Of a stretch of 64,000 nucleotides of DNA, positions 30,815-31,410 are shown one piece after another (positions within the stretch are counted from its first letter, which is position 1; each line of letters starts with the position of its first letter). The notes under the pieces are model-generated. The model did no database searches. It was not told the DNA's origin and worked only from the letters and a program-made list of their open reading frames with translations. The stretch lies in the IMG/VR virus record IMGVR_UViG_3300034117_001294, positions 1 through 64,000 of that record; one strand, given 5' to 3'. Position numbers and translations under genes: made by a program.

Positions 30815-30843
30815 TTGACAGCCTCGTCAAAATGTAGTATAAT
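30815..30843 (+). promoter_or_regulatory. Consensus sigma70 promoter for tmRNA
   Basis: TTGACA-17 nt-TATAAT. Confidence 0.85.
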
Positions 30844-30850
30844 TTAAGTT

Positions 30851-31195
30851 AAGACTGTATGAAGTAGACAGAAAAGGATTCAAGACGCGGGGGCAGTGCC
30901 CGCCAGGTCCACCATAAAACACATTAGCCTGACTGAAACGGGCATCGAGTACGTGGAACGTGGAAGAAGGTTCGATTCCTTCATACTCAATTTCAGTAGT
31001 GTGTTTTATAATGGGCCTGACACAGGATCGATTGGGTCACAAGTATTGAAATGGACAGTCCGGCAATGTAGAAGCCGTTAGGATTGGGGTGACCCGGTCG
31101 CAGAAGCAAAACAAAGTAACCGCAAACGACTCACAGTTCGCATTAGCTGCCTAAACTCAGCTTAGGGTAGTTATACCTCGTAACAGAAAATAACA
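30851..31195 (+). ncRNA. ssrA: Circularly permuted (two-piece) tmRNA; acceptor piece about 30851-30914, coding piece from 31013, tag ANDSQFALAA at 31122-31154
   Basis: T-arm GCGGG-GGCAGTG-CCCGC plus CAGGTCC-A-CCA precedes the 5' strand GGGCCTG; 7-bp acceptor stem with G3.U70; tag gca aac gac tca cag ttc gca tta gct gcc taa; outer boundaries approximate. Confidence 0.92.
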
Positions 31196-31222
31196 GAAAG
31201 CACCTTCGGGTGCTTTTCTTTT
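31195..31222 (+). terminator. Intrinsic terminator after tmRNA
   Basis: gaaagcacc-ttcg-ggtgctttt-ctttt. Confidence 0.85.
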
Positions 31223-31251: not shown

Positions 31252-31410
31252 ATGAAACAGAGAAAGCTAGTAGCTAAACTGTACAGGGCTTGCGTCGACC
31301 ACGATGCCGAGAAACAATACGAACTTCGTTTAAAAGAGTTCGCCAAAATCTTGAAACACAAGGCCGAAGGCAAACCGTTTACACACAAATGGACTTTGGT
31401 AAGGATTTAA
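31252..31410 (+). CDS. Small basic protein, 52 aa (not in ORF track)
   Basis: AGGAGG RBS, TAAATA at 31226; MKQRKLVAKLYRACVDHDAEKQY... Confidence 0.6.
   Translation: MKQRKLVAKLYRACVDHDAEKQYELRLKEFAKILKHKAEGKPFTHKWTLVRI

What the first reader, a model, noticed from the sequence alone, without database searches (positions are those of the whole stretch)
30815..31222. Phage-encoded permuted two-piece tmRNA with alphaproteobacterial-type T-loop
Seen: the acceptor piece ending CCA (30914) lies upstream of the coding piece (31013). It has a perfect 7-bp alanine acceptor stem with G3.U70, T-loop GGCAGUG instead of UUCRA, tag ANDSQFALAA, a consensus sigma70 promoter and a terminator. Established: permuted ssrA occurs in alphaproteobacteria (GGCRGUA-type T-loop), some cyanobacteria and some betaproteobacteria. 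Inference: an early-expressed phage ribosome-rescue RNA, useful as a host marker and possibly able to replace a host tmRNA that is attacked by defence nucleases.
Basis: partly seen in the sequence, partly recalled or inferred. Interest (0 to 1): 0.7.

Follow-up and report, generated by a model that had tools for sequence, protein, structure and literature searches.

The report
Lake jumbo-phage two-piece tmRNA gene
A large lake-water phage carries its own complete, expressed, split ("two-piece") ribosome-rescue RNA of the alphaproteobacterial type, a kind already known from other phages, though its spacer between the two pieces is unusually long, structured and tRNA-like.

Summary
Window 30851-~31195 (+) is a circularly permuted tmRNA gene. 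Rfam scores: tmRNA_permuted 101 bits (cut-off 47), alpha_tmRNA 71 (cut-off 50); beta (61/84) and cyano (14/70) fail. It has a 7-bp acceptor stem with G3.U70, ACCA at 30911-30914, T-loop GGCAGUG, tag ANDSQFALAA, a 12/12 sigma70-type promoter and a terminator. At least 119 IMG/VR contigs carry the same tRNA-like core. Covariation supports the helices joining the two pieces, and the tag frame stays open with an LAA/MAA end. Lake metatranscriptomes show zero depth on flanking genes, low depth on the spacer and up to thousands on the coding piece.

The host is the 229-kb part of an uncultured lake jumbo phage (39 tRNAs, no SmpB found).

Phage two-piece tmRNAs are already published (Melnitz, pelagimyophages), so the kind is known. 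The "host marker" idea is weak: the scaffold is alpha-type, but the 10-residue AND..FALAA tag occurs in bacteria with one-piece tmRNA. The defence-nuclease idea is untested.

New here is the spacer. A covarying 9-13-bp closing helix occurs in 91% of phage copies (11% of bacterial). The window has a tRNA-like T-arm module; relatives have real protein genes (DUF2061).

The parts
30815..30843 (+). Sigma70-type promoter, TTGACA (30815-30820), 17-nt spacer, TATAAT (30838-30843). The start is predicted near A30851.
   Evidence: 12 of 12 matches; 30 of 76 distinct family upstream regions have at least 10 of 12 matches at the same distance. RNA contigs begin at 30852 and 30854.
30851..30914 (+). Acceptor piece, about 64 nt. 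It holds the 5' strands of the inter-piece helices (30853-30858; 30877-30879 plus 30881-30883), the T arm (30887-30903, loop GGCAGUG 30892-30898), the acceptor 3' strand (30904-30910), A30911 and CCA (30912-30914).
   Evidence: One search shows covariation in both inter-piece helices. RNA depth is 6-35.
30915..31012 (+). Intervening sequence, 98 nt, expected to be absent from the mature RNA. Its parts are a closing helix (30915-30926 with 30997-31008), the spacer UAAU (31009-31012), a hairpin (30927-30931 with 30939-30943) and an inner stem (30947-30951 with 30984-30988). The inner stem encloses a canonical T-arm-like hairpin GAAGG/UUCGAUU/CCUUC at 30966-30982.
   Evidence: fold with z-score -2.8; closing helix in 91% of phage copies. 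T-arm analysis; low RNA depth (0-7); no Rfam tRNA match.
31013..31195 (+). Coding piece.
- Acceptor 5' strand: 31013-31019.
- D-loop analogue ACACAGGAUCGA: 31020-31031.
- 3' strands of the inter-piece helices: 31032-31038 and 31055-31060.
- Hairpins: 31061-31077 and 31082-31099.
- Tag frame: 31122-31154.
- Stop-codon hairpin: 31145-31162.
- Conserved CCUCGUAACAGAA: 31176-31188, inside a helix formed by 31170-31174 with 31190-31194.
- The abundant RNA seems to end near 31175-31190.
   Evidence: pair counts. RNA depth up to 19,923, falling to about 0 after 31193.
31122..31154 (+). Tag reading frame: resume codon GCA, ten codons (ANDSQFALAA) and stop UAA.
   Evidence: the same tag occurs in 17 family members, and 45 different tags in the family keep an open frame, nearly all ending LAA or MAA.
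31196..31222 (+). Intrinsic terminator: a 9-bp stem, a UUCG loop and a T run.
   Evidence: RNA depth is about 0 here.

Best explanation
This is a working phage copy of a two-piece (circularly permuted) tmRNA of the alphaproteobacterial type.

1. Host RNA polymerase transcribes one precursor, about 370 nt, from the sigma70-type promoter to the terminator.
2. In the precursor the acceptor stem, the ACCA/UAAU junction and a 12-bp closing helix form one long stem, and the 98-nt intervening sequence sits on it as a loop.
3. Host tRNA-processing enzymes remove that loop. RNase P cuts before G31013. An endonuclease followed by 3' trimming exposes CCA at 30914.
4. This leaves a roughly 64-nt acceptor piece and a roughly 170-nt coding piece, held together by the acceptor stem and two further helices.
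5. Host AlaRS charges the RNA through G3.U70.
6. With host SmpB and EF-Tu it enters stalled ribosomes, and translation resumes at GCA 31122.
7. The stalled peptide receives the tag ANDSQFALAA, is degraded by host proteases, and the ribosome is freed.

For a jumbo phage with 39 tRNAs, this probably adds rescue capacity while host mRNA is being destroyed and phage translation is heavy.

**Shown:** the gene's anatomy, family-wide covariation, conserved tag frames, and strong accumulation of the coding piece but not the spacer in lake RNA.

**Inferred:** the processing enzymes, charging, tagging, timing, and the benefit to the phage.
For: - Rfam RF04321 scores 101.1 bits and RF01849 70.9 bits, both over their cut-offs. 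Beta and cyano models fall below theirs.
- ARAGORN -ps gives the same domains and tag.
- At least 119 viral contigs share the T arm. In 80 distinct sequences G1-C72, G2-C71 and G3.U70 are invariant, while pairs 4-7 covary with 2-4 pair types each.
- The inter-piece helices pair in 65-80 of about 80 sequences with up to 6 pair types. Hairpin 31082-31099 pairs in 48-50 of 50.
- 45 different tags keep an open frame, and nearly all end LAA or MAA.
- A closing helix of at least 8 bp occurs in 91% of phage spacers, against 0.6% of shuffles.
- RNA runs show 0 depth on the flanks, 0-7 on the spacer and up to 4,571 (at 97% likeness or more) or 19,923 (at 90% or more) on the coding piece. A DNA run is flat at about 8.
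- The best bacterial relative is only 72% identical, against 91-97% for phage copies. This points to long residence in phages.
Against: - There is no direct test of charging, SmpB binding or tagging.
- The RNA data are assembled contigs, so true ends are not mapped. Depth on the conserved coding piece also sums close relatives.
- No convincing pseudoknot 1 was found upstream of the tag, only two tandem hairpins.
- The one candidate long-range pairing (31034-31040 with 31089-31095) does not covary.
- No SmpB was found in the 229 kb held, so function depends on a compatible host SmpB, and the host is unknown.
- ARAGORN's default threshold rejects the gene.
Confidence: 0.8

Rival explanations
1. 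Decoy or inhibitor. The RNA binds host SmpB, AlaRS or ribosomes but does not tag. It shuts down host trans-translation, as reported for the tag-less tmRNA-like RNA of mycobacteriophage DS6A.
For: PMC11915505 cites the DS6A form as inhibiting endogenous tmRNA in E. coli. The phage lacks its own SmpB. No clear pseudoknot 1 was found.
Against: The tag frame is intact. Across the family it varies internally while keeping the frame, the stop codon and the LAA/MAA degron. That pattern would not be maintained in a pure decoy.
Confidence: 0.07
2. Counter-defence spare part. The phage copy replaces a host tmRNA that is cleaved by a defence or toxin nuclease during infection.
For: Only circumstantial. 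The phage also carries 39 tRNAs, which in other phages are proposed to offset tRNA-targeting defences (my own knowledge). The phage tmRNA differs from bacterial ones by at least 28%.
Against: No nuclease, repair enzyme or target site was identified here. No CCA-adding enzyme was found. RtcB and RNA ligase were not searched. A simple capacity boost explains the same data.
Confidence: 0.1
3. Selective tagging for takeover. The phage tmRNA mainly tags truncated host proteins early in infection, to recycle amino acids. This was suggested for phage Melnitz.
For: PMC9004378 proposes this for a phage two-piece tmRNA behind an early promoter. The window's gene has a perfect sigma70-type promoter.
Against: Nothing in tmRNA gives selectivity for host over phage messages. 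Relatives place the gene behind other upstream motifs or behind tRNAs, so early timing is not universal.
Confidence: 0.1
4. Passenger or relic. The gene is a recently captured host gene, or a leftover of integration into ssrA, with no function for the phage.
For: tmRNA genes are common integration sites, and prophages can carry ssrA fragments (PMC9004378).
Against: The gene is complete, with its own promoter and terminator. It belongs to a large phage-only lineage only 72% identical to the nearest bacterial gene. Its helices covary and it is highly expressed.
Confidence: 0.03

Closest known systems
Alphaproteobacterial two-piece tmRNA (Rfam RF01849; Caulobacter ssrA, Keiler et al. 2000 as cited in PMC9004378)
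   Same: The gene order is permuted, with the CCA-ending acceptor piece first. The T-loop is of the GGCRGU type, the D-loop analogue contains AGGAUCGA, and the tag begins AND and ends LAA. The 3' motif AACAGAA is conserved. The score passes the family cut-off.
   Different: - The acceptor stem is GGGCCUG rather than GGGGGCG.
- The tag is 10 residues, AND-S-Q-FALAA, rather than ANDN... of 11-14 residues.
- The intervening sequence is 98 nt with a closing helix, against a median of 31 nt without one.
- The 5' hairpin of the Rfam model is absent.
- Sequence identity is 72% at most.
Phage-encoded two-piece tmRNAs of Methylophilales phage Melnitz, pelagimyophages and cyanophages (PMC9004378)
   Same: A permuted, alpha-type ssrA sits in a large aquatic myovirus-like phage behind a sigma70-type promoter, and the phage has no SmpB. 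The tmRNA type need not match the host class.
   Different: - blastn found no similarity to any of 50,697 GenBank phage records.
- This is a freshwater jumbo phage, not a marine T4-like phage.
- Rfam found no glutamine riboswitch.
- The long structured intervening sequence was not described for those phages.
Permuted tmRNA with an intact tRNA-Ala inside its intervening sequence (one case, called unique in PMC11915505)
   Same: tRNA-type structure lies in the spacer between the two tmRNA pieces.
   Different: Here there is only a T arm plus a 5-bp stem. It gives no tRNA model hit and is not a copy of any of the phage's tRNAs.
Betaproteobacterial and cyanobacterial two-piece tmRNAs (RF01850, RF01851)
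   Same: Permuted gene order and two-piece architecture. The tag resembles tags of the beta/gamma type.
   Different: Both score below their family cut-offs: 61 against 84 bits, and 14 against 70 bits. Those models have a canonical UUCGA-type T-loop, whereas this gene has GGCAGUG.

Membership tests
Permuted (two-piece) tmRNA, alpha type (RF04321 / RF01849) | Score at or above the curated Rfam gathering score | tested here: met
   RF04321 scores 101.1 bits against a cut-off of 47. RF01849 scores 70.9 against 50.
Permuted (two-piece) tmRNA, alpha type (RF04321 / RF01849) | Circular permutation: the 3' tRNA-like half ending in CCA lies upstream of the 5' half and the tag frame, in one transcription unit | tested here: met
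   CCA is at 30912-30914 and G1 at 31013. A single promoter and a single terminator flank both pieces. RNA contigs span the junctions at low depth.
Permuted (two-piece) tmRNA, alpha type (RF04321 / RF01849) | 7-bp acceptor stem with the alanine identity pair G3.U70, discriminator A and encoded CCA | tested here: met
   Read from the sequence. G3.U70 is invariant in 80 of 80 distinct family sequences, while pairs 4-7 covary.
Permuted (two-piece) tmRNA, alpha type (RF04321 / RF01849) | Non-canonical T-loop of the GGCRGUA type, and a D-loop analogue containing AGGAUCGA | tested here: met
   The T-loop is GGCAGUG, whose last base is G rather than A. The exact T arm occurs in at least 120 bacterial species, almost all Alphaproteobacteria. 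The D-loop analogue is ACACAGGAUCGA.
Permuted (two-piece) tmRNA, alpha type (RF04321 / RF01849) | Helices that hold the two pieces together, supported by compensatory changes | tested here: met
   30877-30883 pairs with 31032-31038, and 30853-30858 with 31055-31060. Pairing holds in 65-80 of about 80 sequences, with 2-6 pair types per position.
Permuted (two-piece) tmRNA, alpha type (RF04321 / RF01849) | Tag reading frame: a resume codon for Ala, a C-terminal LAA-type degron, and a stop codon in a hairpin loop | tested here: met
   The tag is ANDSQFALAA plus UAA. The frame is conserved with 45 tag variants. The stop hairpin 31145-31162 is partly supported.
Permuted (two-piece) tmRNA, alpha type (RF04321 / RF01849) | Pseudoknot 1 between the tRNA-like domain and the resume codon | tested here: inconclusive
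   Two tandem hairpins are present, 31061-31077 and 31082-99, and the second is well supported. No covarying pseudoknot pairing was found, and some relatives have a single hairpin there.
Permuted (two-piece) tmRNA, alpha type (RF04321 / RF01849) | Processing into two separate RNAs with loss of the intervening sequence | tested here: inconclusive
   In RNA runs the coding piece reaches depths of hundreds to thousands, the spacer 0-7 and the flanks 0. A DNA run is flat. These are assembled contigs that also sum relatives, so exact ends are not mapped.
Permuted (two-piece) tmRNA, alpha type (RF04321 / RF01849) | Alanylation, SmpB binding and trans-translation activity | not testable with these tools
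   This needs biochemistry or genetics. No phage SmpB was found in the 229 kb held.
Betaproteobacterial two-piece tmRNA (RF01850) | Score at or above the gathering score | tested here: not met
   61 bits against a cut-off of 84.
Cyanobacterial two-piece tmRNA (RF01851) | Score at or above the gathering score | tested here: not met
   14.3 bits against a cut-off of 70. That match covers only the T-arm-like hairpin of the spacer.
tRNA gene inside the intervening sequence | Cloverleaf recognised by ARAGORN or the Rfam tRNA model | tested here: not met
   ARAGORN finds no tRNA even at lowered thresholds, apart from implausible intron-containing calls. Rfam gives no tRNA hit on 30915-31012.

The most novel reading that the evidence does not exclude
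In this phage lineage the spacer between the two tmRNA pieces may be a maintained slot that delivers a second product, not just junk to be discarded. A conserved closing helix starts right after CCA and ends 4 nt before G1. It frames interchangeable inserts that tRNA-processing enzymes would release together with the tmRNA pieces. In the window the insert is a tRNA-like T-arm minihelix, which could be a processing handle for RNase P or RNase Z, or a small RNA in its own right. In relatives the insert is a real protein gene. Those genes take their ribosome-binding site from the closing helix and their stop codon from the UGA of the UGAU spacer. The invariant tRNA-like halves on each side would serve as recombination arms for swapping inserts.
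Probability: 0.3. Interest if true: 0.7.

Novelty: new variant of a known kind. Interest (0 to 1): 0.45.

Why it matters
- **Abundance.** A large, apparently uncultured family of freshwater phages carries and strongly expresses its own ribosome-rescue RNA. ARAGORN misses the gene at its default threshold, so it is probably under-annotated.
- **Host prediction.** The family combines an alphaproteobacterial scaffold with tags typical of bacteria that have one-piece tmRNA. This is a warning against using tmRNA type to predict phage hosts.
- **Precursor processing.** The conserved closing helix gives a concrete, testable model for how permuted tmRNA precursors are cut.
- **Nested genes.** The inserts (a tRNA-like module here, protein genes in relatives) would be an unusual case of a gene nested in the discarded part of a stable RNA precursor.

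Tried and rejected
- **ARAGORN at default settings** found no tRNA or tmRNA in the window. Only the relaxed -ps setting finds the gene.
- **Cultured relatives.** megablast and blastn against 50,697 GenBank phages found no homologous tmRNA. RIIA gave only matches of about 29% identity to PA5oct-like Pseudomonas jumbo phages, so no host inference was possible.
- **Pseudoknot 1.** The 7-bp complementarity between 31034-31040 and 31089-31095 was rejected, because relatives do not keep it.
- **Origin of the spacer T arm.** It is not a copy of one of the phage's 39 tRNAs. It is unique in the genome, and only the generic loop motif recurs.
- **Spacer as a tRNA.** There was no Rfam hit.
- **Phage-encoded helpers.** SmpB, CCA-adding enzyme and RNase III were not found in the 229 kb held, which CheckV rates 65% complete.
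- **Tags in the literature.** The tags were not found in papers or in the tmRNA database supplements.
- **Naming the bacteria with the ANDEQFALAA tag.** I could only show that those genomes are about 2 Mb, locally 37-39% GC, and have standard tmRNA. The Janthinobacterium-labelled MAG was unusable as a betaproteobacterial anchor.
- **My first coordinates** for the stop hairpin and the 3' helix were off by one. They were corrected.

Full report
**1.

The sequence shows the following features.
- An acceptor 3' strand CAGGUCC (30904-30910), then A and CCA (30911-30914).
- 98 nt later, the complementary 5' strand GGGCCUG (31013-31019). This gives seven pairs, the third being G.U.
- The T arm GCGGG/GGCAGUG/CCCGC (30887-30903).
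- The frame GCA AAC GAC UCA CAG UUC GCA UUA GCU GCC UAA (31122-31154), which reads ANDSQFALAA.

A 12/12 sigma70-type promoter lies at 30815-30843, and a terminator hairpin with a T run at 31196-31222.

Rfam places the locus in tmRNA_permuted (101.1 bits, cut-off 47, E 1.6e-18) and alpha_tmRNA (70.9 bits, cut-off 50). Scored separately, beta_tmRNA reaches 61 bits against a cut-off of 84, and cyano_tmRNA 14.3 against 70. ARAGORN at default thresholds reports nothing in the window. With relaxed thresholds it calls a permuted tmRNA with the same domains and the same tag. Routine annotation would therefore probably miss this gene.

**2. Where it sits.**

The window is the first 64 kb of a 228,849-bp IMG/VR virus record that CheckV rates 65% complete. 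GC content is about 40%.
- The rest of the record carries 39 tRNA genes, mostly at 86-102 kb.
- The neighbours are on the same strand: ThyX, a DUF2452 protein, a CHAP-like protein and dCMP deaminase upstream, then a metallophosphatase and a family-2 glycosyltransferase downstream.
- The window also encodes NrdA, NAMPT, RIIA and tail-fibre-like proteins.
- RIIA's best cultured matches are PA5oct-like Pseudomonas jumbo phages at about 29% identity, so the phage has no close cultured relative.
- Fourteen lake-water metagenomes hold the locus almost completely, so this is a freshwater phage.
- SmpB, a CCA-adding enzyme and RNase III were not found in the 229 kb held.

**3. It belongs to a large phage lineage.**

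Of these loci plus the window, 104 allowed full extraction. Most share the window's acceptor stem and D-loop analogue.

In 80 distinct sequences:
- G1-C72, G2-C71 and G3.U70 never vary, while pairs 4-7 show two to four pair types each.
- Both helices that join the two pieces covary. These are 30877-30883 with 31032-31038, and 30853-30858 with 31055-31060.
- A hairpin at 31082-31099 is paired in 48-50 of 50 sequences, with compensatory changes.

The stop-codon hairpin and a 3' helix around the conserved CCUCGUAACAGAA are partly supported. I could not establish a pseudoknot upstream of the tag. There are two tandem hairpins, and the one tempting long-range pairing in the window does not covary.

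The family encodes 45 different tags, all in open frames and nearly all ending LAA or MAA. ANDSQFALAA is the commonest (17 copies), followed by ANDEQFALAA (10). Variable interiors with a fixed frame and a fixed degron are what a functioning tag template predicts.

**4. It is made as RNA.**

Four freshwater metatranscriptomes were laid on the locus as assembled contigs. The depths were as follows (at 90% likeness or more).

| Region | Depth |
|---|---|
| Upstream gene | 0 |
| Acceptor piece | 2-35 |
| Intervening sequence | 0-7 |
| Coding piece | up to 2,824 in one run and 19,923 in another |
| From 31194 onward | about 0 |

At 97% likeness or more the pattern holds, with up to 4,571 on the coding piece. 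A DNA run from lake water is flat at about 8 across the whole 1.2 kb.
- Low-depth RNA contigs cross the CCA/spacer/G1 junctions, as a precursor would.
- Adapter-joined contig ends suggest that the abundant RNA ends near 31175-31190, before the terminator.

There are two caveats. Contigs do not give true RNA ends, and depth on the conserved coding piece includes close relatives.

**5. How it most likely works.**

The steps below are established for tmRNA in general. Steps 3-5 are inferred here.
1. One precursor is transcribed from the promoter. Its start near 30851 agrees with RNA contigs that begin at 30852 and 30854.
2. In the precursor, the acceptor stem continues through ACCA opposite UAAU (UGAU in most relatives, which pairs at three of four positions). 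It then runs into a closing helix that begins at the first spacer nucleotide and ends exactly 4 nt before G1.
3. RNase P would cut before G1. The U at position -1 fits its known preference (my own knowledge).
4. An endonuclease plus 3' exonucleases would trim back to CCA. The roughly 22-24-bp composite stem could also be an RNase III substrate.
5. The two pieces stay paired, AlaRS charges the RNA through G3.U70, and host SmpB and EF-Tu deliver it to stalled ribosomes. Translation resumes at GCA 31122 and ends at UAA 31152.

**6. Comparison with what is known.**

Phage-encoded two-piece tmRNAs are already described. PMC9004378 reports them in Methylophilales phage Melnitz, pelagimyophages and cyanophages. 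It counts 53 two-piece forms among 133 distinct phage tmRNAs, mostly aquatic. PMC11915505 lists 79 phage tmRNAs. The kind is therefore known.

This lineage has no blastn-detectable relative among 50,697 GenBank phage records. Its nearest bacterial relative in my sample is 72% identical (an uncultured alphaproteobacterial MAG, L228), against 91-97% for phage copies.

**7. The host-marker claim.**

Bacterial genomes with the identical T arm are almost all Alphaproteobacteria: Acetobacteraceae, Rhodospirillales, Hyphomonadaceae and Kordiimonadales.

Those 115 bacterial genes, however, have GGGGGCG-type acceptor stems and ANDN... tags of 11-14 residues. None has a 10-residue AND-x-x-FALAA tag.

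In a sample of 401 Pseudomonadota genomes, 21 carry such a tag.
- All five loci I checked are standard one-piece tmRNAs.
- Two of those five are the loci that encode ANDEQFALAA (genomes of about 2 Mb, locally 37-39% GC).

Together with the Melnitz precedent, an alpha-type ssrA in a phage of a non-alpha host, this means the tmRNA type cannot be read as the host's class. The host remains unknown.

**8. What is unusual: the intervening sequence.**

- Bacterial alpha-type genes in my sample have a median spacer of 31 nt. The phage lineage has a median of 87 nt, ranging from 10 to 382.
- A closing helix of at least 8 bp, anchored at the two ends of the spacer, occurs in 91% of 75 distinct phage spacers. 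The figure is 11% for 89 bacterial ones and 0.6% for shuffles.
- There are 55 distinct 9-mers at the spacer start among those 75 phage spacers, and many compensatory changes. The 4-nt spacer is UGAU (54) or UAAU (16).

In the window, the helix encloses a 5-bp hairpin and a second stem (30947-30951 with 30984-30988). That second stem carries a canonical T-arm hairpin, GAAGG/UUCGAUU/CCUUC.
- Such T arms occur in 4 of 76 distinct phage spacers, against 0.46 expected from shuffles, and in 0 of 113 bacterial spacers.
- A dedicated scan found only three lineages with them. In two (L015, L076/L277) the T arm directly abuts the 3' strand of the closing helix, as in a tRNA.
- The window's module is not a tRNA by ARAGORN or Rfam, and it is not copied from a phage tRNA.
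- PMC11915505 mentions one permuted tmRNA with an intact tRNA-Ala in its spacer and calls it unique.
- Whether the module helps processing, is a separate small RNA, or is debris cannot be decided here.

**9. Side finding in relatives.**

Longer spacers hold open reading frames of 23-123 codons.
- They start 10-16 nt after CCA.
- They use the AAGGA of the closing helix as a ribosome-binding site.
- Most of them stop at the UGA of the UGAU spacer, 1 nt before G1.

At least seven unrelated proteins occupy this slot.
- Two (L029, L050) are full-length matches to the membrane-protein family DUF2061, with E about 1e-20.
- Pairs show coding-type substitution: pN/pS is 0.22, with 33 of 50 differences at third positions, and 0.15 for a second pair.
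- One RNA contig joins an acceptor piece to a spacer that opens with such a ribosome-binding site and an AUG.

The window's exact 98-nt spacer and tRNA-like core occur in other contigs (L018, L275, L278) whose outer tmRNA parts are only 83-85% identical. This suggests that inserts are exchanged by recombination between the invariant tRNA-like halves.

**10. Verdict.**

The ribosome-rescue function is well supported by comparative and expression evidence, but it has not been demonstrated biochemically.

The host-marker inference is unsafe, and the defence-nuclease idea is untested. The kind of element is already known. The phage-lineage spacer architecture is the part that may be new.

Noticed in passing
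L029:3292-3501 (-), L050:6984-7193 (+), L061:4627-4941 (+), L031:2886-3248 (+), L080:1854-2225 (-), L083:964-1173 (-), L011:3053-3271 (-), L030:7467-7625 (+): Protein genes of 52-123 codons lie inside the intervening sequence of related phage tmRNA genes. They start 10-13 nt after CCA, and their Shine-Dalgarno site lies in the closing helix. Most stop at the UGA of the UGAU spacer. L029 and L050 match DUF2061 (E about 1e-20), and pN/pS is 0.15-0.22. At least seven unrelated proteins occupy the same slot.
   Followed up: partly
L015 (spacer of 76 nt), L076 and L277 (spacer of 96 nt): Other spacers carry canonical T arms (UUCGAAU, UUCAAUU) that directly abut the 3' strand of the closing helix. 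In L076 the spacer folds as a four-hairpin, cloverleaf-like junction.
   Followed up: partly
L018, L275, L278 compared with window 30843-31202: These contigs share a 100% identical spacer and tRNA-like core with the window, but the outer parts of both tmRNA pieces are only 83-85% identical. This is a mosaic pattern that suggests recombination between tmRNA backbones.
   Followed up: partly
G000:C1:86566-126505 (outside the window): 39 tRNA genes lie mostly in arrays at 86.5-94.6 kb and 101.3-102.4 kb. One has an unassigned anticodon and one is an Ile-tRNA(UAU)-like gene.
   Followed up: no
Upstream regions of L006, L015, L019, L021, L033, L038, L041; also L018, L027, L038: Many relatives lack the sigma70-type promoter. 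Some have a TAAATAAAAG-like motif just upstream of the acceptor piece, possibly a phage-specific promoter. Others have the 3' end of a tRNA gene directly upstream, so the tmRNA sits in a tRNA array.
   Followed up: no
L218, L186, L174, L161 (genome contigs): MAGs labelled Bacteroidota, Saccharibacteria and Gracilibacteria hold short contigs with the T-arm pattern. L218 and L186 carry phage-type tmRNA genes, and L218 has the same spacer as viral L014. These are probably phage contigs that were binned wrongly. The Janthinobacterium-labelled MAG contig (72% GC) carries an Acetobacteraceae-like tmRNA.
   Followed up: no
Family tags (e.g. ANYIIANDDYYDYALAA, ANKVNANDSQFALAA, ANFITANDELYSIAA): Several relatives appear to have tags with a five-residue AN-x-x-x extension before a second AND. 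Either these are real longer tags, or my tag finder picked an upstream in-frame GCN-AAY and the true resume codon is the second one.
   Followed up: no
window 31252-31410 (+): A 52-codon ORF with a strong Shine-Dalgarno site (GGAGGA) lies directly after the tmRNA terminator. It has no Pfam match. Two RNA runs show low coverage there.
   Followed up: no
G133:C4 and G217:C6 (L272, L271): Two unnamed Pseudomonadota genomes of about 2 Mb, locally 37-39% GC, have standard tmRNAs that encode ANDEQFALAA. This is the second commonest tag of the phage family, so they may point to the host group.
   Followed up: partly
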